A DNA stretch of 63,124 nucleotides, filler included, from Octopus bimaculoides (Eukaryota): assembly GCF_001194135.2 (NCBI RefSeq). It is 10 parts of 9 records of this genome, joined end to end, with 100 filler letters (N's around TTAATTAATTAA, not from the genome) between each part and the next. Parts side by side here need not be neighbours in the genome. Positions count along the whole stretch, not along the records: positions 1 to 11,584 come from NC_068996.1; 9 more parts are not named here. One strand, given 5' to 3'. This document shows positions 1 through 23,062 of the stretch, piece by piece (position 1 is the stretch's first letter; the number at the start of each line of letters is the position of its first letter). The notes beneath the pieces are model-generated. The model was given only the letters and a program-made list of their open reading frames with translations. It did no database searches and was not told the DNA's origin. A program made the position numbers and the translations under genes.

Positions 1-347
1 CAATTCTACTCCTCCAGTTTGATTTTCTTTTCGAATTTGGTATTGTTGGCTTGTTGGGTGTTAAACAGCGTCTTTCGATTACTTTAGCAACAGAGTAAAT
101 GATTTCATTCAATTTATTAAGATCGGGTTTTAGTTGTTGTATGATCTCTTGTGTAACGCAGTTGCCAATTTTTATTTGCGTTTTATGTTGGTGTGCATTT
201 GAGAGTTTATGGAGTGGTTTCCTATCATTAATATTTGTATGCCCTACAACTGCAAGCTCATTCAGAACTTCCTGCTTCATTTCAGTGATAGATTTTCTGT
301 GTTGTTCTGCAAATATGTGGTCTAGTGATAGATTTTCTGTGTTGTTC
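1..347 (-). mobile_element. R4/Dong-clade non-LTR retrotransposon, N-terminal ORF fragment running off the window
   Basis: My translation of the minus strand is stop-free from ~300 to 1 (RKSITEMKQEVLNEL...RKPLHKL...DLNKLNEIIYSVAKVIERR...SNWRSRI). It resembles the region upstream of the RT in R4/Dong ORFs. A 24-bp direct duplication lies at 284-307 and 324-347. Confidence 0.55.
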
Positions 348-349
348 GG

Positions 350-350
350 C

Positions 351-425
<75 letters not shown>
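350..425. repeat. (ATT)n microsatellite
   Basis: Direct reading of the sequence. Confidence 0.99.
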
Positions 426-427
<2 letters not shown>

Positions 428-471
428 ATCACTGCCTGGAATCGAATTCGGACTCTTATGCCTATGGGCAT

Positions 472-589
472 ATGGCGTATTGGTTAAGATCGCGGACCAC
501 TAACCCCAAGATCCCGGGTTCGATTCCAGACAGTGGCCTGAATAATAATAATAATAATAATTATAATAATGAAAATAATAATAATAATG

Positions 590-671
<82 letters not shown>

Positions 672-683
672 TAATAATAATAA
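472..683 (+). mobile_element. Very short tRNA-derived SINE with (AAT)n tail
   Basis: A box TGGCGTATTGG at 473-483 and B box GGTTCGATTCC at 517-527, followed directly by (AAT)n from 541. No complete tRNA acceptor stem is evident. Confidence 0.7.
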
Positions 684-929
684 TGACATCCAAAAATACC
701 TTAGGAATGATATTTCATCTCATGGTGAAGTTTAATATCAAGCACAGGTTTATACGTCAGCAATCTAGTCAACAGAACTGAAATGCAAATGTACACCTGA
801 AGGACTAACGAGCTTATAAACAATTGAAAGGAATTTGTAATAATCCAAAGATATTTCGACTGTTCAAAAACAATAATAATTCTTTCTCTAATAAATGACC
901 TGAAATTTAAGGAAAGGGAATGAGAGGAT

Positions 930-1599: not shown

Positions 1600-2700
1600 T
1601 CAACACACGATTTCACATAAGAAATCTTGCAAAACAAATATATATATANNNNNNNNNNACAAAGTTTGAATTGTTTCCAAAAGAATTTTTGTCAATTTTT
1701 CAGCTAAAACTGTCTCCAGCTCTTGAGGAGGATATCGACGCTTTACTTGTTTTTCTAAAATGCACCATAAATGTTCAATAGCATTGAAATTTGGATACTG
1801 TGGTGGCCAGATAAGATGTTCAACTTCACTAGAATGCTCCTCGTGCCATTCTTTAACAAGTTCACCTGCGTGCATTGGTGCATTAGAATCCTGAAAAATT
1901 GCATTTTCCTCTGGAAGCAGTTCTACAACCATAGGATTAATTTGATCAGATAAAATACTTAAACAGTATTGACTATTAATTCTGCCATAAAGGGAAACCA
2001 TTGTGCCGGCGGATTTCCAAGATGTAGCCGCCCCCCAGCTCATCACAGATCATCCTCCGTGTTTAACAGTTGGAAGAAGGCAGAGTCTGGGTCAAATGCT
2101 TCTTTTGGCTGTCTCCACACGTATATTCAGCCGGTGGTCGGAAATAAAGTAACGGATGACTAGTTCGAGAAAATAAAATTCTTCCACTGCGCTAGGGACC
2201 AATTCTGTAGGTTTTTAGTCCGCTCTAAACGCTTTGCAACGTTTGTTTTTGAAAGTAGTGGTTTTCTGATAGTAGCCCTCCCAGTAAATCCGTCTTTGTG
2301 GAGCTCCCGGCGAACAGTTTTTGTGAAAACTGGGTTCTGGAGCTGGTTATTAAGCTCTGCAGTAATTTTGGGAGCTGTACTTTTGTGATCCTTTCTAACA
2401 ATTTGTATAAGAGTCCAACGATTCCTATCTGAATGTTTTGGTTTTCTTCCGGACTTTTGTTTCGACGAGGTTTATCCCTCTTTCTCAAAGGCTGTCATCA
2501 CTTTCGAGAATGTACTTCTTGATGCATCAATCGGTTCGGCTGTTTTAGTTACGCTAGCACCTGCCATAGGAGCACCAACAATTTGGCCTCTTTGTAAGTC
2601 TCATGAATCTGTCATTTTGTCATTTTAATGAATTTTAATTACCTTTTTCTGATATCTGAAACGAAACAGCAATTTTAGGAAAACATATTAAGCATCACTA
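1600..2700 (-). mobile_element. Degenerate Tc1-family DNA transposon
   Basis: ATG at 2615 gives MTDS*DLQRGQIVGAPMAGASVTKTAE. The catalytic region reads MMSWGAATSW...IFQDSNAPMH...WPPQYPNFNAIEHLW (DD34E-type). Stops and frameshifts are present. Confidence 0.9.
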
Positions 2701-2837: not shown

Positions 2838-3175
2838 TGCAGTAAGAAGCTCGGTTCCCAATCACATGGTTCCGGTTTCAGTCTCACTGCGTAGCACCAC
2901 GGTCAAGTGCTTTCTACTGTAGCCTAGGGCCGACCAAAACCTTGTTAGTGGCTTTGGCAGATGGAAACTGAAAGAAGTCTATCATATATATGTATGTGTG
3001 TGTGTGTATGTATGTGTGTGAGTTTCTGCCTGTGATTAACCTCCCCATCACCGCTTGACAACGGATGTTGGCATGCTTACGTTCTCGTAACCTGTCCGAA
3101 TAAGTACCAGGCTTTTAAAAAATTGCTGAGATCGATTCTTTCGGTTACAGTCTAATTACTGAAACAAGTAAAAGA
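2838..3175 (+). mobile_element. tRNA-derived SINE family A (CORE-like body, microsatellite, tail)
   Basis: Matches the copies at 5553, 23200, 25060, 28948 and 61268 (gtggtaagtagcttgctt...ccttgggcaagtgtcttctactatagcc...ggaaactgaaagaagcc). Confidence 0.8.
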
Positions 3176-3619: not shown

Positions 3620-5430
3620 TGAAAAGCACTATGGAAGGTAAGATTGACATGCCAAATTGGCTTGCTATAACGTGGACAAATCTTATAGCAAAGAATGAAA
3701 CTTTGCCTGATAACTACAAGTCTATTGCTTGCCTAAACATTATGTGTAAATTGTATACAAGCGGCATCAACCAATTCCTGCAGGATCATTGTGAGTCTAA
3801 CAATATAGTGACTTATGAGCAGGCCGATAAAAAGAAAGGAGCATGGATATATGCCGAACAACTTCTGATGCACAAGCTGTTGAGTTCGAAGGGAAGAAAC
3901 GTCGTTGGAGCCTTGCAGCAGTATGGTTTGGTTAAAGGCATTCTATTCTATACTTAACTCTTGGCTGCTGAAGTGTCTACGTTCTGCAGAGTGCCTGCTA
4001 CCCTAATTGCTACCATTAAGAGGCTCGGAAAGACCTGAACAACAATTCTTACACTGAGAACGGACGATCGTTTCCGACGTTATAAATAGTTCAAGGTAAT
4101 GTTCCAACGACATAGTCTTTCAGTAATTCTATTCATTTTGGCATTAAATCCATCATAATTCTTGCTACAATAAACATCTGACTGTTTGCTAGGGTCTGCA
4201 ACTGCTAGAGATATTAATGTAATCCATAATTCCTTTGTGGATGTCTTCAAGACTTATTCTAAAAATGTTTACAATGTCAAAAGACAGCTGGAATTAATAA
4301 CATTTTAAGCTGACATAGGAATGGAATTTGACCAAAAACAAATGTTCATATTTCATTGTCGAAAGCGGAAAATTTGTCCCCCAGATTCAAAAACCTGTGC
4401 ATCAATGGTTTCCTAATCTCCCCTGTTTTACACAGAATAATACAACTATCTAAGCGTTGATGAAAACATATCATACGATGGTGCTGTAAATAAAGATAGT
4501 GACCCGTGAATATGAACCAGACTTAGAGACTATGGAATCGGAACTATTTTCTTACAAAAAGACAATATTTTACTATGCATTTTCAGTGCCAATACTGATT
4601 CCAGCATTTGGGATATTTGACTAGTCTCTAAAAGAAATCCATTCCATTAATGTTAAAATCCATAGGATCCTGACGTCAATTGGAAATCTCTTGAGAAAAT
4701 AGTTTCTATCTAATAAGAGATAACGGAGGTAGAGGCTTGAGAACAGTGCAGATAGTCTTCGAATGTCGAATAGCTTTATTCAGACAGCACTTGCAAAACA
4801 ACAGCAAAAATAAATACAGCGCTGCAAAGTGAAGAGAATAATATCCTACGCATCATTAGCAAGTGCCTTAGGAAACAATCTATAACTGATGCCCTCCCAT
4901 ACAATCCCCAAATTGCCGGACTAACATACCTCAAAGAAGACCTGGTTGTGAAACGTTCATCATACGAAAAGAAGAAGGCAAGGGTATCTTTTTAGAAGAA
5001 CTGAATATGACAATAATATCGGCATGAAAAGCAGCCTCTCTTTGACTCGTTACCTTTCCATCACATCATAAATTGAAAGTTATGCATTTTCAATCCAAGA
5101 ACAGGAGATTCTTACGAAATATCTAATGAACAAAATAGACAGTGAAGCCCTTGGAACTCCAAGATGTAACCGAAAATGTAAATTGTCATATCTCTGCGGA
5201 AGACATCGCCAATGTGATTAACAGCTGCCCTAAAATGTTATGGTACTACATCTTTATGCGACATGACATTGTCTTAAAAATAATATACAATACCATTCGG
5301 CAAAAACACCTATGATAAATATAGAGTATCTGCCTGTTATTGAACACATACACAAACATCAACACAAAGATTACTGGTGGAACATTCCCATGAAAATCTC
5401 TGCCAAGCATCATAGACCAGATACTGTTGT
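3598..5430 (+). mobile_element. Degenerate R4/Dong-clade retrotransposon (RT plus restriction-like endonuclease)
   Basis: RT motifs NYKSIACLNIMCKLYT, MFQRHSLSVILFILALNP and ADIGMEF. The C-terminus has MRHDIVLKIIYNTI and YWWNIPMKISAKHHRPDTVV (RH...PD, RLE-type). Many stops. Confidence 0.8.
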
Positions 5431-5552
5431 TACCTCACGGTCATGACCTAGTCGAGAGCATTTTATTCTTGAATGGAAACATCGTGTTTACGTTACCTTT
5501 CATGCAAACTGTAAAATTTAATCCAGTCTATATACATGCATACATAAACAAA

Positions 5553-5720
5553 GTGGCGTAGTTGTGTGGTAAGTAGCTTGCTTCCCAACTACATGGTTAC
5601 AAGTTCAGTCTCACTGTGCCGCGTCTTGGCCAGGGGTCTCTTACAATAGCCTCGAGCTGACCAAGGCCTTGTGAGTGGATTTGGCAGAGTGAAACCGAAA
5701 GGCACCCGTCGTATATATAC
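5553..5720 (+). mobile_element. SINE family A copy followed by (GT)n
   Basis: Similarity to other family A copies. Confidence 0.85.
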
Positions 5721-5721
5721 A

Positions 5722-5806
<85 letters not shown>

Positions 5807-5820
5807 GTGCGCGCGCGTGT

Positions 5821-6030
5821 GCATCATCATCATCATTTAACATACACTTTCTATGCTTGCATAGGTTAGATGAAATTTGTTGAGGCAGAATTTCTACAAC
5901 CAGACATCCTTCCTGTTCCCAACTCTTATCTATTTCCAAGCAAGTTAATATTTCCCATGGCCAGACATGTTTTTCTGTGGAAGACAAGAAACAAATAACA
6001 ATACTTGTATGATGGCAATGCATTCTGTTA
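5821..6030 (-). mobile_element. RTE-tail SINE fragment (family C-related) with (CAT)n tail
   Basis: Matches 24740-24960 (catcatcatttaac...ccatgcttgcat...gatgcccttcctg...ttcccatggccagacatgttt). Confidence 0.65.
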
Positions 6031-7508: not shown

Positions 7509-7742
7509 TTTAAAATTTAGGCTTCAGCAAGTATTGCTTCACCAAACACCGAAAATTAGAAATACCAGCCAAAACTACTATTTCTCTACTAAAATACGAC
7601 TCCCAGAAACAGTAACACTCGCAAAATAACGAATCTACCCGATCTTGATTGATTGTGCACGCGCGTTTCTTGATCAATGAGGTGTGAAAATATATTTCGA
7701 TGTGTGGTGAAGCAATACTTGTTGAATCCTAAATTTTAAATT
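7509..7742. mobile_element. MITE with ~45-bp terminal inverted repeats
   Basis: Left tttaaaatttaggcttcagcaagtattgcttcaccaaacaccgaaa versus reverse complement of right tttaaaatttaggattcaacaagtattgcttcaccacacatcgaaa (4 mismatches). Confidence 0.8.
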
Positions 7743-8163
7743 GTGTTTATATATTTAATGATAATGGTTTTTAACACACCGAACTACTTAGTAAAATTAC
7801 TAATTATCAATTAATTATTAATTTTTACCCTGTATCACATACATACATACNNNNNNNNNNNNNNNNNNNNNNNNNNNNNNNNNNNNNNNNNNNNNNNNNN
7901 NNNNNNNNNNNNNNNNNNNNNNNNNNNNNNNNNNNNNNNNNNNNNNNNNNNNNNNNNNNNNNNNNNNNNNNNNNNNNNNNNNNNNNNNNNNNNNNNNNNN
8001 NNNNNNNNNNNNNNNNNNNNNNNNNNNNNNNNNNNNNNNNNNNNNNNNNNNNNNNNNNNNNNNNNNNNNNNNNNNNNNNNNNNNNNNNNNNNNNNNNNNN
8101 NNNNNNNNNNNNNNNNNNNNNNNNNNNNNNNNNNNNNNNNNNNNNNNNNNNNNNNNNNNNNNN

Positions 8164-8199
<36 letters not shown>

Positions 8200-8469
8200 A
8201 ATGAGATAAAGAGACCAAAGGAAAAAATAAATTTATTTTTGGCTTCGGTCGCTTTATCTCATTCTTTTTATATATACACACGCTAATACACGACCCATGT
8301 TAAATTCCCCAGTCATGCTGCAACCACATCAGGGGCAGAACTAGTCGGTATACAGCACTTACTCAGTATTACCTGTAACATTCGGGTCTGGTTGATTCCA
8401 TTACCCTTCATAACCTTTATATATATATATATAATATAGTATGAAGGTAAGCAACAAAAATTCAATAGG

Positions 8470-8564
8470 TTATAGCAGTACGTACGTTTCGTAGAAGCTC
8501 CATTTATTCATGTAGTGAGAACACTACAGAAAATACAATGAAAATGTACTCCTCAGCTGCATAA
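8470..8564 (-). ncRNA. Type I hammerhead ribozyme, antisense copy
   Basis: GCAG-CUGAGGA-GUAC...CUAC-GAAA-C-GUAC-G-UA-CUGC. One C-C mismatch in stem II relative to the right copy. Confidence 0.75.
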
Positions 8565-8589
8565 AGGTATTTCATTTTAGAAAGTCATT

Positions 8590-9468
8590 TTGAAGATGTT
8601 TGCAAAAAATTTCGACCCTAACCATAGATATTATAAAATCTTCTCTCAACACACAATCCGTATCTCATACTCTACTCTCCCCAATATAGGATCTATTATC
8701 AATAAGTTAAATAGAAAAAACTTTAAACTAGCTAGGACCCTTGAAAATAAAGATTGTCTTATTATTGATAGCAATACAAATAACTACCAAACTATTAATA
8801 ACACCAACGCAACCAATAATCATGCCCATGTTAATGAACATATTAATACTTCAACTGTTAACATAGTTGATGAGATAAATCTTCCTAGATCAAACAATAT
8901 CAATTGCATATCTAATAATACAACCAACAATATTGATGTAAATAATTTAGATACTTGTATCAATAATCAACATAGCAATATACATATAGCTAATAAGCCC
9001 CTTAATTGCAATTGTAGAATTAAAGCCCACTGTCCGGTATCTGGCCGTTGTTTAACCCGTAATGTAGTCTATAAATGTACAGTAACTACTCCAACTAATA
9101 ATTACATTTATGTTGGTTGCACAATCAACCTTAAACAACGATTATATAACCATTTTTCTTCATTTAGACTTAAACATAAAGCAAATAGCACATCATTATC
9201 TAATAAAATTTGGGAATTGAAGGAAAATGGTATTGATCTTAATCTTAAATGGGAAATCCTAAGGAGAGCACAACCTTATAGAAATAGTAGATATGGCTGT
9301 GGACTGTGTTCTATGGAAATTTATGAAATTTTTAAACTTAAGGATAACCCTAATCTAATTGACAATAGATCTGAGCTTGGGGTTCTATGTGTGCATTGTT
9401 ACTCCCGCACCTTTAAATATTTTAAAAGTAAATATTTTTTTAAAAGTAATTCTTACTTAATTTTTTAA
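8590..9468 (+). CDS. Penelope-like C-terminal half: post-RT linker, Cys motif and GIY-YIG endonuclease (no RT)
   Basis: Stop-free 292 aa with KIFSQHTIRISYSTLPN, CNCRIKAHCPVSGRC, VVY...YVG, RLYNHFSSF, STSLSNKIWELK, CGLC and RSELGVLCVH. The first codons (MKMFA) derive from the inverted repeat. Confidence 0.8.
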   Translation: MKMFAKNFDPNHRYYKIFSQHTIRISYSTLPNIGSIINKLNRKNFKLARTLENKDCLIIDSNTNNYQTINNTNATNNHAHVNEHINTSTVNIVDEINLPRSNNINCISNNTTNNIDVNNLDTCINNQHSNIHIANKPLNCNCRIKAHCPVSGRCLTRNVVYKCTVTTPTNNYIYVGCTINLKQRLYNHFSSFRLKHKANSTSLSNKIWELKENGIDLNLKWEILRRAQPYRNSRYGCGLCSMEIYEIFKLKDNPNLIDNRSELGVLCVHCYSRTFKYFKSKYFFKSNSYLIF

Positions 9469-10188
9469 TTTAGTTCCTATCATTTCCCTGACTTTTTATT
9501 TGAGGTATGACTTTTAATATATACCTAGAATACATTTTAACCCTTCCCAACCCACTGATAGTAGTCCTACATTTTCTCTAAGTTATTCTGAGTCTTTTTC
9601 GAAAACCTTAGCTTTATTTCTCTTAATTTAGTCCTGTTTTTCTAACTCTATTCCTCTCACTTTTTTCCTCTTCCCCCTTCCCCACTTTCTTTCTGTTTGG
9701 ATTTTGGCCATTAATATTATTGTTTTACCCATAAATAATATCACACCACATTAATTTATATCTTATTTCAACTGGATATGTTTATCTTGTTCTATTATTA
9801 TTGTTCCCTATAGTTTTGAACTTAGTAGTTCAGTGCTTCATTGTATTATTCTATTTATACTGTAGAATAGATATATTTCTTTAATACCTTGACCTTAATT
9901 CCCTTACCTTAAATTTTTTCCAAATTCGTACCACTCCTTAGGGTATTGCCCTTCCATTTCCTTTTTTTTCTTCTTTCTCTCATGCTTGATTTACCCCTAA
10001 CCTGCTGTCCACCACTACTTAACCTGCCTTCCTCTAAATTTGAAATTACTACTATCCCTCCAATTAAATTTTAAATTCTTGTTTGATTCACTTGTCTGTG
10101 AAACAGCAGCATAGTCGAGATGTGTTTTCTTCTCTTACTCTTGTTTTTTGCAAACATCTTCAAAATGACTTTTTTAAAATGAAATTCC

Positions 10189-10284
10189 TTTATGCAGCTG
10201 AGGAGTACATTTTCATTGTATTTTCTGTAGTGTTCTCACTACATGAATAAATTGAGCTTGTACGAAACGTACGTACTGCTATAA
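10189..10284 (+). ncRNA. Type I hammerhead ribozyme, predicted cleavage after 10275 (GUA)
   Basis: Stem I GCAG(10194-97)/CUGC(10276-79), extendable by UUAU/AUAA across a bulge. Core CUGAGGA 10198-10204. Stem II GUAC/GUAC. GAAA 10264-67. Stem III is C-G closing the palindromic loop GUAC. Confidence 0.85.
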
Positions 10285-10576
10285 CCTATTGAATTTTTGT
10301 TGCTTAACTTTAAATTTTATTCAACAAATCTCTTAATTTTGTTTTCGGTTTTTATCCTACCAAATTCTGGTGCCTCAAACATTTTAAGTACCACATTTAA
10401 TCTTTTGATTAAATCTATATTATATATATATATATATATATAAATGAACACACACATGACAGAAGTAAACAGGCACACCTTAAACATTGTTTTATGTTCA
10501 TTCTAACTTGTAAAGGTTTATATTTTTTATTGATTGACATTTCTATGCTTCATGTTTTACATGTAACTGTTTGATC

Positions 10577-11584: not shown

Positions 11585-11684
11585 NNNNNNNNNNNNNNNN
11601 NNNNNNNNNNNNNNNNNNNNNNNNNNNNTTAATTAATTAANNNNNNNNNNNNNNNNNNNNNNNNNNNNNNNNNNNNNNNNNNNN
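11585..11684. other. Artificial 100-bp join spacer (44 N + TTAATTAATTAA + 44 N); eight more elsewhere
   Basis: Identical spacers centred at 11629, 20902, 33122, 50323, 53235, 54479, 56739, 58834 and 61880. Confidence 0.95.
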
Positions 11685-12160
11685 TTGCCAGTGCCCCTGG
11701 ACTGGCTCTTGTGCGGCTGACACATGAGGTTTTTCGGGCGAGATCGTTGCCGGTGCCCCTGGACTGGCTCATGTATGGGTGACACATGAAATATATCGAG
11801 CAGGATCATTGCCAGTGCCCCTGGACTGGCTCATGTGCGGGCAACACATGAAATCTTTCGAGCGAGATCGTTGCCAGTGCCCCTGGACTGGCTTTTGTGC
11901 GGGTGGCACATAAAAGACACCATTTCGAGCGTGGCCGTTGCCAGTACCGCCTGACTGGCCTTCGTGCAGGTGACACGTAAAAGCACCCACTACACTCTCT
12001 GAGTGGTTGGCATTAGGAAGGGCATCCAGCTGTAGAAACTCTGCCAAATTAGATTGGAGCCTGGTGTTGCCATCCGGTTTCACCAGTCCTCAGTCAAATC
12101 GTCCAACCCATGCTAGCATGGAAGGCGGACGTTAAACAATGATGATGATGATGATGATGT
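11685..12160 (+). mobile_element. SINE family C (RTE-type 3' end, (GAT)n tail) with internal 62-bp tandem array
   Basis: Near-identical to 29150-29460 (minus). Ends catgctagcatggaaggcggacgttaaac(aatg)(atg)n. Five repeat units start at 11685, 11747, 11809, 11871 and 11938. Confidence 0.8.
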
Positions 12161-13412: not shown

Positions 13413-15144
13413 AGTATTTTCCCTCCTTAGGCTACAGCTTTCACAACTTCCACCTCTCATGATATTCCCATTAATAATCAATGATTTTAGATTAAATACT
13501 AACCACATCAAAATTAACTAATTATCTTATAATGTTAAACTTCAAAATAATGGGGGAAACATGCTGACAGGTATCAGACAGCCAGTTGAGAAGTCATCAG
13601 TTTGTACCCTGTCACCAGCATTCTGTTGTACCCAAATCCTAGACATATAACTCCCAACAGATAAATCCATTTATATCTAAGCAGGTACTGCAAAGAGTAA
13701 CTCTCTGTTGTAAGCAGCTATTTTTCTGTAAAACTGGCAAGGTTTTGTAGGCTTGCAATGATGAGTTCTATTTCTGTTGTATGAAAAGTTGCCTGTGATA
13801 GACCAGCATCTTATCTCATTCACTTGGCACCAAAGAAAATAGAGGCAAACACCAGCCCATTGAATTGTACGGGGTTATATAATTTTTTTTTAAAACTCTT
13901 CCAAACTAAACAAGTTCAATATAGAGCATTGTCATTCTTTCTAAAACTATCAAAAAAAACAAAAAAACTAAGAAAAATTTTAGATTAAAGTAACCATGTA
14001 CATAAAAGAAGTCCTGAAATCTTCAGCAGGAATAGATTTTCTGTGTGAAAAAATAGGCTTCTTTTGTGGAAGGCTTACAATTACTTTTCAAAAAATATCA
14101 TTCTCAAACATTGTCATCAAAATTGAAGACCTCAGAAATACCTTAGAAAATGAAGAAATCAAATTATGCATTATTAGATTTTTAAAAAAAAAGCAATATA
14201 AAAAGGTTTTCTTATAAAGTCTTTTTTTTGGTTAGTTATAAAAAAGTGAGATGTTTCCATTTCAGAGTTATATTGTAATGTGTAAATACATATTTGAACT
14301 AACCTAAAGTTTATGTACTAATCTATATTTTGTTAAGGAATTTCATCTTTGAGGCTATTTTCTGTTGAGATATCTCAAGTTTATTAACATAACATGACTC
14401 GCAGAAAATATCAATTCTATTTTTTGGTAGATGTTTAACATTATTACAGGAATGACCAAGAAATTTAATTTCACAGTGAAAAGATTAATGAGGCTAATTA
14501 TACATTTTTACAGTTGACATGTAGCTACTGGGGATATGCTTACCTAATAGCAGAATAAAAGTATTCAGAGGTCTTTAAAATGCTCTACCTAAGATAGACA
14601 TAAGCAGTATTAATGATGAAAGCAACACTTTGGATTTTATGTCAAACTCTTGTACTGCCTTTGGTTGATCACACATTCAGTTGTCCACAGGAAACTCATC
14701 TGCAATGCAGTCAGAATAGAGTCCCTTCTGGGCTGGCATAAATGGCAACATGGACAGATGAAAATATGGACTAAAATGATCAAATCAGGTATTGAGTTAC
14801 TGAAGTTCATATGTGTATGGTGTCTGCAATCTGAATTATAGCTGGTTGATGATCTCTAAGTTGGACAGTTGTGATTACCAGGTATAGATGGCTTTTGCTC
14901 ATGATGCTGTGAATTTATTGATTGGGGCCAGCTCAACTCAGTCTGGATGAATACCGACACAAGTATTAGTAAGTATTATCATTTAATAACTAATTATTGC
15001 AAAGTGTTACTCACTACTCTTAAGGAAGGTTATTGGATCTCTATGTAGGGAAACTTGTTAATAACTTCATCATGTGGAATTAATTACTCATCACATAAAT
15101 AAATAATACATTCATAAAAGAAAACTGTGTACAAAGTTACTTAC

Positions 15145-22311: not shown

Positions 22312-23062
22312 TCACCTTCAGACATCTTTGGCAGGGGTCATGGACATAACTGGAATTGATCTAAGGTGGATNNNNNNNNNNNNNNNNNNNNNNNNNNNNN
22401 NNNNNNNNNNNNNNNNNNNNNNNNNNNNNNNNNNNNNNNNNNNNNNNNNNNNNNNNNNNNNNNNNNNNNNNNNNNNNNNNNNNNNNNNNNNNNNNNNNNN
22501 NNNNNNNNNNNNNNNNNNNNNNNNNNNNNNNNNNNNNNNNNNNNNNNNNNNNNNNNNNNNNNNNNNNNNNNNNNNNNNNNNNNNNNNNNNNNNNNNNNNN
22601 NNNNNNNNNNNNNNNNNNNNNNNNNNNNNNNNNNNNNNNNNNNNNNNNNNNNNNNNNNNNNNNNNNNNNNNNNNNNNNNNNNNNNNNNNNNNNNNNNNNN
22701 NNNNNNNNNNNNNNNNNNNNNNNNNNNNNNNNNNNNNNNNNNNNNNNNNNNNNNNNNNNNNNNNNNNNNNNNNNNNNNNNNNNNNNNNNNNNNNNNNNNN
22801 NNNNNNNNNNNNNNNNNNNNNNNNNNNNNNNNNNNNNNNNNNNNNNNNNNNNNNNNNNNNNNNNNNNNNNNNNNNNNNNNNNNNNNNNNNNNNNNNNNNN
22901 NNNNNNNNNNNNNNNNNNNNNNNNNNNNNNNNNNNNNNNNNNNNNNNNNNNNNNNNNNNNNNNNNNNNNNNNNNNNNNNNNNNNNNNNNNNNNNNTATAT
23001 ATATGTATATATATGTATGTATGTATATATATATATATACATATACAAATATATATATACAT

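What the first reader, a model, noticed from the sequence alone, without database searches (positions are those of the whole stretch)
8448..10306. Endonuclease-only Penelope-like cassette bracketed by two oppositely oriented hammerhead ribozymes
Seen: a stop-free 292-aa ORF with Cys motif and GIY-YIG domain but no RT, inside ~162-bp inverted repeats (8448-8609 / 10144-10306). Each repeat contains a complete hammerhead core. Known: Penelope-like elements carry type I hammerheads in their pseudo-LTRs, and truncated copies can have inverted pLTRs. Inference: the right ribozyme would cut the 3' end of sense RNA and the left one would cut antisense RNA, while an uncut sense transcript folds into a ~160-bp duplex (ADAR or siRNA substrate). 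The ORF has stayed open although the repeats differ at about 5 sites. This may be a recent truncated copy or a recurring non-autonomous endonuclease-ribozyme unit.
Basis: partly seen in the sequence, partly recalled or inferred. Interest (0 to 1): 0.85.

Follow-up and report, generated by a model that had tools for sequence, protein, structure and literature searches.

The report
Truncated octopus Penelope-like retrotransposon copy
This is an ordinary dead-on-arrival copy of a Penelope-like retrotransposon in an octopus genome: it lost its reverse transcriptase when it inserted, and it picked up a short upside-down copy of its own tail, as this class of elements often does.

Summary
There are inverted repeats at 8448-8609 and 10144-10306 (162/163 nt, 5 differences). 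A stop-free frame (8581-9465) carries a CxCX5C motif and a GIY-YIG nuclease but no RT. Each repeat holds a full type I hammerhead core, with cleavage predicted after 10275.

The cassette is not a distinct endonuclease-ribozyme unit. It is a 5'-truncated copy of a Hydra-clade Penelope-like element (PLE) inserted in a (TA)n microsatellite. A still shorter inverted copy of the same 3' end is fused to it at an A-run near 8601-8609.

Three other octopus loci carry the same arrangement. Their arm lengths are 270, 365 and 257 bp against 162 bp here, and the main copy starts at a different point in each. Two of them retain the RT. Same-family protein fragments read straight through the window's junction.

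A roughly 100-nt 3' tail (10315-10415) is shared with other copies and ends at (TA)n.

The hammerhead has a 2-bp helix III inside an 8-nt palindrome (ACGUACGU). This is the dimer-dependent PLE type, so one sense copy per transcript is unlikely to cut efficiently. Each arm also has a private mutation in helix II.

All of this architecture is described in the PLE literature. Interest is low.

The parts
8413..8438 (.). (TA)n microsatellite: left half of the insertion target
   Evidence: Read directly from the sequence. The tail-less ends of other copies abut (TA)n in the same way. Hydra-clade PLEs insert into (TA)n (PMC8557442).
8439..8609 (-). Inverted, severely 5'-truncated copy of the element's 3' end (the left arm, an inverted pseudo-LTR). 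It lacks the tail.
   Evidence: It matches 10144-10314 with 5 differences over the core 162 nt. It is 93% identical to the L003 arm. Its outer end, GCTTACCTTCATAC, lies in register with the tail-less ends of L002, L003 and L001.
8475..8560 (-). Hammerhead ribozyme motif on the antisense strand, with an intact core and a C.C mismatch at the 4th pair of helix II
   Evidence: The private G->C change (CUUCUAC) stands out against the family consensus seen in L003.
8601..8609 (.). Junction between the inverted arm and the main copy, inside an A-run (GCAAAAAA / parent CAAAAAAATTTC), so its exact position is ambiguous
   Evidence: The arm alignment ends here. Protein homology to P0001, P0002 and P0005 begins at KNFDPNH. 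The microhomology is inferred.
8604..9468 (+). Remnant of the PLE ORF: the end of the RT-EN linker, an N-rich block, the CxCX5C motif and the GIY-YIG endonuclease, ending at the native stop. There is no RT. About 63 aa of the N-rich block are missing in frame.
   Evidence: The residues invariant across the Hydra-clade EN alignment (Y, Y.G, K.R, H, W, W, C.LC, E, N, E, C.H) are all present.
9469..10143 (+). 3' UTR of the element (T/C-rich)
   Evidence: It aligns with the L002 3' UTR at 86% over ungapped columns. Positions 9957-10315 align with the L003 arm at 95%.
10144..10314 (+). Right arm: the terminal pseudo-LTR segment of the main copy
10194..10279 (+). Sense-strand type I hammerhead motif. 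Helix I is GCAG/CUGC, the core is CUGAGGA ... GAAA, helix II is long, and helix III is A-U plus C-G with a GUAC loop. Cleavage is predicted between 10275 and 10276.
   Evidence: It has a private G->U change in the helix II extension.
10315..10415 (+). 3' tail, present at only one end of the insertion unit, containing the conserved TTCTGGTGCCTC..TTAAGTAC
   Evidence: It aligns with L001 11900-12020 and L001 7100-7215, each of which is followed by (TA)n. It is absent from the inverted arms and from the L002 right end.
10416..10445 (.). (TA)n microsatellite: right half of the insertion target

Best explanation
The region 8439-10415 is one composite insertion of a Hydra-clade Penelope-like retrotransposon (PLE) into a (TA)n microsatellite of an octopus genome, probably Octopus bimaculoides or a close relative.

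The main copy on the + strand was reverse-transcribed from the element's 3' end, starting at the outer, tail-containing start site. It stopped early, inside the linker between the RT and the endonuclease. Only the last 290 or so codons survive (linker, CxCX5C motif, GIY-YIG EN), together with the 3' UTR, the hammerhead-bearing terminal segment and the tail.

A second cDNA was primed from the opposite target strand at the inner start site, so it lacks the tail. It was extended for only about 170 nt. The two were joined head-to-head at an A-run (8601-8609), which produced the inverted repeat.

The cassette is therefore a non-functional by-product of integration. It has no RT, and no promoter is evident for the ORF. 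The upstream arm is inverted, so any promoter it carries would point away from the ORF (inferred from what is known of Penelope pLTR promoters, not tested). The two hammerhead motifs are inherited passengers of the dimer-dependent PLE type.

**Shown:** the anatomy, the family assignment, the variable junctions in relatives and the RT-bearing relatives.

**Inferred:** priming on both strands, two start sites and joining by microhomology. These are taken by analogy from the in vitro behaviour of the Anolis Poseidon PLE (PMC11167929).
For: **Family assignment.**
- The GIY-YIG domain is detected by Pfam.
- 4539 homologues were found among 1.84 billion representatives. In the long ones (697-726 aa) the EN always lies at the C-terminus.
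- The alignment shows every Hydra-clade diagnostic listed by Craig et al. 2021: RMRW(K/R), ADKT, YRDD, CxCX5C, and CxxC and CxH around the catalytic E and N.
- The target is (TA)n.

**Truncation.**
- Same-family octopus proteins P0001, P0002 and P0005 continue 60-215 aa upstream of the window's junction.
- L003, from O. bimaculoides, is 93-95% identical in nucleotide sequence to the window's arms and carries the RT (P0154, with ADKT and YRDD).
- L001, from O. sinensis, holds an 809-aa RT+EN ORF of a sister family.

**The inverted arm is a general, variable by-product.** Arms of 270 bp (L002), 365 bp (L003) and 257 bp (L001) are each joined to a main copy truncated at a different point.

**Tail.** It is present at the window's right end and at two L001 ends. 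It is absent from all inverted arms, which abut (TA)n 12-15 nt after TTGTTGCTT.

**Literature.**
- An inverted 5'-truncated copy next to the 5' end, an optional tail at one end, and hammerheads in pLTRs are typical PLE features (PMC8557442).
- The purified PLE protein cleaves and extends both target strands, and it starts reverse transcription at two internal sites that delimit the tail (PMC11167929).

**Decay.** Each arm has a private mutation in helix II relative to the family consensus. In L002 the left-arm hammerhead has lost G12, and the end of the EN ORF is frameshifted.
Against: - The ORF remnant is fully open, and all conserved EN residues are intact. If indels accumulate at the rate suggested by the single indel between the arms, neutral survival would be only about 3%. 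That rate rests on one event in a T-run.
- The tail here is about 100 nt, longer than the 30-40 nt reported for other PLEs.
- Only four genomic loci and three protein fragments were sampled, because the octopus genome could not be searched directly. A minor subfamily sharing the window's junction is not excluded.
- The two-strand priming mechanism has not been shown for this family.
Confidence: 0.9

Rival explanations
1. A distinct, recurring non-autonomous unit: an endonuclease-only ORF bracketed by opposed hammerheads that is itself copied, mobilised in trans by autonomous PLEs.
For: - A second EN-only copy with inverted arms exists (L002).
- The ORFs of the window and L002 differ with dN/dS of about 0.20.
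- The window's ORF is open, has intact catalytic residues and gains an in-frame ATG from the arm.
Against: - The L002 junction differs on both sides: the arm is 270 nt against 162 nt, and the ORF starts about 120 bp further 3'.
- L003 and L001 show the same inverted arm attached to RT-bearing copies. The arm therefore comes with integration and not with an EN-only unit.
- The low dN/dS is expected for two copies that descend from different active masters at 89% nucleotide identity. It says nothing about selection after insertion.
- A unit with an inverted 5' arm would have to be transcribed from outside itself.
Confidence: 0.04
2. Two independent insertions: a very short PLE 3' fragment inserted in inverted orientation beside an earlier or later truncated copy, both attracted to the same (TA)n target.
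For: - (TA)n is a preferred target, and PLE fragments are dense in these genomes. Examples are the extra fragment at L001 7020-7215 and the unrelated PLE EN remnants in L001 and L002.
Against: - No (TA)n or other target sequence lies between the arm and the main copy. They are fused directly inside element sequence.
- The same direct fusion recurs in four of four loci examined.
- The arms differ by only 3%, which fits a single age.
Confidence: 0.04
3. A DNA transposon, foldback or MITE-like element with about 160-bp terminal inverted repeats that captured a GIY-YIG gene.
For: Long inverted repeats flank an ORF.
Against: - The right end of the element is not the repeat. A conserved 100-nt tail follows it, shared in direct orientation with RT-bearing copies.
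- The inner ends of the repeats vary between copies.
- The ORF is the C-terminal part of a retrotransposon polyprotein.
Confidence: 0.01

Closest known systems
Hydra-clade Penelope-like elements (Craig, Yushenova, Rodriguez & Arkhipova 2021, PMC8557442)
   Same: - C-terminal GIY-YIG EN with a CxCX5C linker motif, and with CxxC and CxH motifs flanking the catalytic E and N.
- DKT and RWK motifs in the RT-bearing relatives.
- Full-length ORFs of about 700-726 aa.
- Insertion into (TA)n.
- A canonical-type hammerhead near the 3' end.
- Occurrence in molluscs.
- 5' truncation, inverted 5'-truncated partner copies, and a tail at one end.
   Different: - This copy lacks the RT entirely.
- The octopus family has long N-rich low-complexity inserts in the linker, giving an 809-aa ORF in L001.
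- The tail is about 100 nt instead of 30-40 nt.
- Helix II of the hammerhead carries a 51-nt extension, which pushes it below Rfam's threshold.
Penelope of Drosophila virilis and other canonical PLEs with direct or inverted pseudo-LTRs
   Same: The terminal repeats may be inverted, they arise from a truncated partner copy, and a hammerhead motif sits inside the repeat.
   Different: It belongs to a different clade. It lacks the CCHH arrangement inside the GIY-YIG core and has a different RT N-terminal motif set.
Dimer-dependent metazoan type I hammerheads of PLEs (Cervera & de la Pena 2014, PMC4209133)
   Same: - Type I topology.
- Helix III of 1-2 bp capped by a 4-nt palindromic loop. Here ACGUACGU is an 8-nt palindrome, and the sister family in L001 has ACAAUUGU.
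- The predicted double-hammerhead is about 9 kcal/mol more stable than two monomers.
   Different: - Helix II is much longer, about 59 nt including an inner hairpin.
- There is no unpaired nucleotide between A9 and G10.1.
- In this locus the two copies face each other, so one transcript cannot supply both halves of a dimer.
Poseidon PLE of Anolis carolinensis, PAc (Frangieh et al. 2024, PMC11167929)
   Same: The genomic signature matches its in vitro behaviour. There are two alternative 3' ends (with and without the tail), which fit two RT start sites. Copies lie on both strands of one target, which fits cleavage and extension of both strands.
   Different: It is a different clade and host. 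Nothing was tested biochemically here.
Animal non-LTR retrozymes (non-autonomous, hammerhead-bearing PLE derivatives)
   Same: They are PLE-derived sequences that carry type I hammerheads and lack an RT.
   Different: Retrozymes are tandem direct repeats of a non-coding unit, each with a sense hammerhead, so that dimers and circular RNAs can form. This cassette has opposed motifs, a coding remnant and a unique junction.

Membership tests
Penelope-like element, EN+ (Hydra clade) | GIY-YIG endonuclease at the C-terminus of the single ORF | tested here: met
   Pfam GIY-YIG scores E=3.9e-6, above the cut-off. The native stop lies about 40 aa after the catalytic N. In full-length homologues of 697-726 aa the matching stretch is C-terminal.
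Penelope-like element, EN+ (Hydra clade) | PLE-type reverse transcriptase upstream of the EN in the same ORF | tested here: not met
   This copy has none, because homology to the family begins at KNFDPNH in the linker. The family itself has one. L003 (same family) and L001 (sister family) carry ADKT ... FDxxxYxSI ... YRDD ... FLD upstream. Pfam RVT_1 is only weakly detected in one homologue, at E=3e-4 and below the cut-off. This is a truncated member, not an autonomous one.
Penelope-like element, EN+ (Hydra clade) | Clade diagnostics: DKG changed to DKT; RWK motif; CxCX5C linker motif; CxxC and CxH around the catalytic E and N; no canonical CCHH | tested here: met
   In the window: CNCRIKAHC, CGLC and CVH. 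In relatives: ADKT and RMRW(K/R), or RIRWK. The octopus family has two Cys near the GIY/YIG motifs (YKC, VGC). They are not conserved across the clade and are not in the canonical C..C arrangement, so absence of CCHH is judged only by alignment.
Penelope-like element, EN+ (Hydra clade) | Insertion into (TA)n microsatellites | tested here: met
   (TA)n lies on both sides of the unit in the window, and at the ends of copies in L001, L002 and L003.
Penelope-like element, EN+ (Hydra clade) | Structural hallmarks: 5' truncation, an inverted or tandem partner copy forming pseudo-LTRs, and an optional tail at one end | tested here: met
   Described as typical in PMC8557442.
Hammerhead ribozyme, type I | Conserved core CUGANGA ... 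GAAA ... UH, with G10.1-C11.1 and A15.1-U16.1 | tested here: met
   Both arms read CUGAGGA-G...C-GAAA-C-GUAC-G-UA. There are 2 matches against 0.01 expected.
Hammerhead ribozyme, type I | Three helices around the core, with helix I open | tested here: met
   Helix I is GCAG/CUGC. Helix II is GUAC/GUAC plus an extension. Helix III is 2 bp with a GUAC loop. The minimum-free-energy or centroid folds of the L002 copies, and the two-copy cofold of the window copy, give this topology. The palindrome covaries between families: ACGUACGU against ACAAUUGU.
Hammerhead ribozyme, type I | Rfam RF00163 gathering score | tested here: not met
   It scores 18.9 bits against 34, because of the 51-nt insertion in helix II. 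The whole-window scan did not report it.
Hammerhead ribozyme, type I | Self-cleavage | not testable with these tools
   This needs in vitro transcription of monomer and dimer constructs.
Animal non-LTR retrozyme | Tandem direct repeats of a non-coding unit, each with a sense hammerhead | tested here: not met
   The two motifs are on opposite strands and a coding remnant lies between them.
TIR DNA transposon / MITE | Inverted repeats at the true termini, with fixed inner and outer ends, flanked by a TSD | tested here: not met
   The right terminus lies 100 nt beyond the repeat, and the inner ends of the repeats differ in every copy.

The most novel reading that the evidence does not exclude
The truncated ORF gains an in-frame ATG (8596) from the inverted arm and keeps every conserved EN residue. 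It might therefore be expressed as a stand-alone linker plus GIY-YIG nuclease. Alternatively, the 160-bp intramolecular duplex might feed siRNA or ADAR pathways in octopus. Either would give this class of integration by-product a host or element function. Nothing found here supports expression or selection after insertion.
Probability: 0.04. Interest if true: 0.4.

Novelty: already known. Interest (0 to 1): 0.1.

Why it matters
It matters little beyond annotation. The locus is a clean worked example of the composite head-to-head insertions that PLEs make, with the tail at one end only. It is consistent with the model from in vitro work in which both target strands prime and reverse transcription has two start sites.

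It also has two practical uses:
- Two public gene models are PLE fragments and are likely misannotated: 'myb-like protein D' in O. bimaculoides and 'myelin gene regulatory factor-like A' in O. sinensis.
- Rfam misses this hammerhead variant because of its long helix II.

Tried and rejected
- **Rfam over the whole window at E<=1.** It gave no hammerhead. Only a 201-nt search showed the sub-threshold hit.
- **Pfam on the RT-bearing ORFs.** RVT_1 was not found in L001. It was found below the cut-off in only one of six long homologues. The RT identity therefore rests on motif alignment and on the published clade description.
- **Exact-protein look-ups.** P0001, P0002, P0005 and the window's own ORF found no contigs. 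The source contig and further same-family copies could not be retrieved that way.
- **Supplementary tables of Craig et al. 2021.** They are not held, so I could not check whether an octopus Hydra family is already catalogued.
- **Naiad-type (N-terminal EN) PLE remnant.** I considered this and rejected it. The EN is followed by the native stop and 3' UTR, the RT lies upstream in relatives, canonical hammerheads are present, and there is no CxC/KR block.
- **ARAGORN.** It found no tRNA in the window.
- **Collection scans.** I did not scan the metagenome, viral or prokaryotic DNA collections for the junction. They do not hold octopus genomes, so a negative result would mean nothing.
Full report

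Yes. The stretch 8448-8609, read as reverse complement, aligns with 10144-10306 over 162/163 nt, with four substitutions and one 1-nt indel. The repeat finder reports the same pair as the longest non-microsatellite inverted repeat in the window.

Between the arms lies a stop-free frame, 8581-9465, with its stop at 9466-9468. It is listed as a 292-aa ORF from a TTG at 8590. The first ATG is at 8596, inside the left arm. Pfam finds a GIY-YIG domain above its curated threshold. The motif CNCRIKAHC lies just upstream of it. The ORF has no reverse transcriptase.

Both arms contain CUGAGGA-GUAC...(G/C)UAC-GAAA-C-GUAC-G-UA, followed by CUGC and preceded by GCAG. This lies on the + strand at 10198-10275 and on the - strand at 8556-8479. 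A pattern of this form occurs twice in the window against 0.01 expected from 200 shuffles.

Rfam's type I hammerhead model aligns every core position but scores only 18.9 bits against a gathering score of 34, because of a 51-nt insertion in helix II. The whole-window scan therefore did not report it.

**2. What is it?**

The window is octopus DNA. The closest proteins are from Octopus bimaculoides and O. sinensis.

An exhaustive phmmer search found 4539 representative proteins related to the ORF. In all the long ones (697-726 aa) the matching stretch is at the C-terminus. Aligning those proteins with an 809-aa ORF from O. sinensis (L001 8255-10684) shows the following motifs:
- RMRW(K/R)
- ADKT
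- FDxxxFYPSI
- GLYRDD
- FLD
- SNHP
- a linker (IWFNPPF ... KIFN..T.K.SYS)
- CNCx5C
- a GIY-YIG domain with CxLC before the catalytic E and CxH after the catalytic N

These are, point for point, the diagnostics that Craig et al. 2021 give for the Hydra clade of Penelope-like elements. That paper lists DKT in place of DKG, an RWK motif, CxCX5C, CxxC/CxH in place of CCHH, short elements, insertion into (TA)n, canonical hammerheads and presence in Mollusca.

The window copy is flanked by (TA)n on both sides, at 8413-8438 and 10416-10445.

**3. Truncation and the junction**

Same-family octopus protein fragments (P0001, P0002, P0005; 86-89% identical where they overlap) continue upstream of the window's ORF. 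They read ...IWLNIPYNYAVSTNIYKKFMDILQKNFDPNHRYYKIF.... The window reads KVILKMFAKNFDPNHRYYKIF, and its first eight codons come from the inverted arm. The coding part is thus the 3' portion of a PLE ORF, cut in the RT-EN linker.

The arm ends in GCAAAAAA, and the parental sequence there would read CAAAAAAATTTC. The join therefore lies in an A-run at 8601-8609. The microhomology is inferred.

The window copy also lacks about 63 aa of an N-rich low-complexity block present in P0001, P0002 and L002. The deletion is in frame.

**4. Is the cassette a recurring unit?**

No, as far as the available sample shows. Four loci carry the inverted-arm arrangement, and every junction differs.

| Locus | Source | Relation to window copy | Inverted arm | Where the main copy starts |
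|---|---|---|---|---|
| Window | octopus, species not given | this copy | 162 nt | KNFDP, in the RT-EN linker; EN only |
| L002 | O. bimaculoides CM046603.1 | same-family copy (74% nt by blastn over ~1.6 kb, 89% ungapped over EN) | 270 nt (96% complementary) | NIELARTLENK, about 120 bp further 3'; EN only |
| L003 | O. bimaculoides CM046604.1 | same family, 93-95% nt identity to the window arms | 365 nt, tail-less, abutting (TA)n | Near the ORF N-terminus (...NPPPNPLLENFEKDLL...ADKT...YRDD...); RT present; 3' part lost in assembly gaps |
| L001 | O. sinensis | sister family, 56% aa identity in the EN | 257 nt (7587-7843 against 11667-11910) | Near full length, RT+EN |

The inverted arm is therefore a regular accompaniment of integration in these families. 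Both its length and the main copy's 5' end vary from insertion to insertion.

This is what the literature describes. [quoted passage not shown]

**5. The tail and the true right boundary**

The window's right arm is followed by about 100 nt (10315-10415) containing TTCTGGTGCCTC..TTAAGTAC. This stretch aligns with the sequence that follows the right arm in L001, and with a further short fragment at L001 7045-7215. Each of these ends at (TA)n.

All inverted arms (window, L001, L003) and the L002 right end lack this tail. They meet (TA)n 12-15 nt after TTGTTGCTT. So there are two alternative 3' ends.

This matches the biochemistry of the Anolis Poseidon PLE. Its protein cleaves and extends both target strands. 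It also starts reverse transcription at two internal sites, and the interval between them is the genomic tail (PMC11167929).

My reading is that one cDNA was primed at the outer site and ran about 1.8 kb. A second was primed on the other strand at the inner site and ran about 170 nt. The two were then joined. This last step is inference by analogy.

**6. The hammerheads**

Helix III is only A-U plus C-G, closed by GUAC. Together these form the 8-nt palindrome ACGUACGU. The sister family in L001 has ACAAUUGU at the same place, a different palindrome, which is covariation. The L002 right arm has ACGUAUGU, which is still self-complementary through G.U pairs.

This is the dimer-dependent architecture described for metazoan PLE hammerheads. 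Single motifs of that kind showed no detectable cleavage in vitro, and dimers cleaved weakly (PMC4209133). Co-folding two copies of the window's right-arm motif gives the double-hammerhead with an 8-bp intermolecular helix III at -58.2 kcal/mol. Two monomers together give 2 x -24.6 kcal/mol.

In this locus the two motifs face each other. A sense transcript would contain one ribozyme and its exact complement, with a predicted arm-arm duplex of -254 kcal/mol. That arrangement disfavours ribozyme folding.

The motifs also show decay:
- Relative to the family consensus seen in L003 (AAAUGGAGCUUGUAC), the right arm has G->U in the helix II extension.
- The left arm has G->C, which creates a C.C mismatch at the fourth pair of helix II.
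- In L002 the left-arm motif has lost G12 (GAAA changed to AAAA).

In the Anolis system, ribozyme cleavage was not needed for insertion, and no RNA ends mapped to the cut site.

**7. Does the open ORF mean selection?**

The window and L002 ENs differ with dN/dS of about 0.20 at 89% nucleotide identity. That reflects purifying selection on the active master elements from which the two copies descend, not on the copies themselves.

At the divergence seen between the arms (about 1.25-2.5% per lineage), substitutions alone leave the 295-codon frame open in 37-62% of simulations. Adding indels at the rate implied by the single indel between the arms drops this to about 3% or below. That rate comes from one event in a T-run and is very uncertain.

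The L002 copy has already lost the C-terminal CxH through a deletion. I see no compelling sign of selection after insertion.

**8. Verdict**

The PLE assignment and the 'truncated copy' alternative are right. The 'recurring endonuclease-ribozyme unit' is not supported. The proposed processing and dsRNA roles are untested and, for cis cleavage, unlikely.

The structure is a documented by-product of PLE integration, so novelty and interest are low.

The main caveat is sampling. Only four genomic loci and three protein fragments could be examined, because the octopus assemblies could not be searched directly.

Noticed in passing
window 10315-10415: A conserved 3' tail of about 100 nt (TTCTGGTGCCTC..TTAAGTAC) lies beyond the right repeat. 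It is shared with two ends in L001 and absent from all inverted arms. It is longer than the 30-40 nt tails reported for other PLEs.
   Followed up: yes
window 8830-8840 (ORF, between NNHAH and VNEHINTS): An in-frame deletion of about 63 aa of the N-rich low-complexity linker, relative to P0001, P0002 and L002. It is unknown whether this is a subfamily trait or arose after insertion.
   Followed up: partly
window 7852-8163: An assembly gap (run of N) about 280 bp upstream of the element, bordered by (TA)n. L002 has a 10-N gap exactly at the outer edge of its left arm, and L003 has large gaps inside its copy. This fits the published remark that these inverted PLE structures disturb assemblies.
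   Followed up: no
window 8201-8262: A 62-nt near-perfect hairpin (AATGAGATAAAG...CTTTATCTCATT) directly after (TA)n. It gives only weak, sub-threshold Rfam miRNA-model hits on both strands (26.9 bits against a gathering score of 76). Its nature is unknown.
   Followed up: no
window 1600-2046 (-): A remnant of a Tc1/mariner-type transposase (Pfam DDE_3, E=2.6e-9), interrupted by a short N run.
   Followed up: partly
window 340-690: A tRNA-like segment (GGTTCGATTCC box, about 426-540) sits between a (TTA)n and a (TAA)n tract that form a long inverted microsatellite pair. ARAGORN calls no tRNA, so it is probably a tRNA-derived SINE.
   Followed up: partly
window 2842-3034 and 5569-5761: A 193-nt direct repeat at 73% identity, each copy next to a (TG)n/(TA)n microsatellite. 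It is probably another dispersed repeat family.
   Followed up: no
L001 5209-5934 (-), L001 13844-14362 (-), L002 21875-22150 (+): Further, unrelated PLE endonuclease remnants of the canonical CCHH type (for example IIYCISCSLCHSLYIGQT). Pfam detects GIY-YIG in the two L001 remnants only (18.4 bits, below the cut-off, for 5209-5934; 28.5 bits for 13844-14362); the L002 21875-22150 call rests on the motif read by eye. They lie within a few kb of the Hydra-clade copies, so PLE debris is dense in octopus genomes.
   Followed up: partly
L001 10614-10769: A 78-nt tandem duplication (78% identity) that spans the end of the EN ORF and its stop codon in the O. sinensis copy.
   Followed up: no
P0003 (O. 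sinensis) and P0004 (O. bimaculoides; L002 10001-24066): Public gene models named 'myelin gene regulatory factor-like A' and 'myb-like protein D' consist largely of the N-rich linker/EN of this PLE family. They are likely annotation artefacts.
   Followed up: partly
junctions: window 8601-8609; L002 about 22768-22775; L003 about 9140-9160: All three same-family arm/main-copy junctions lie in A-rich runs. This hints at joining by microhomology, but the element is very AT-rich, so it could be chance.
   Followed up: partly
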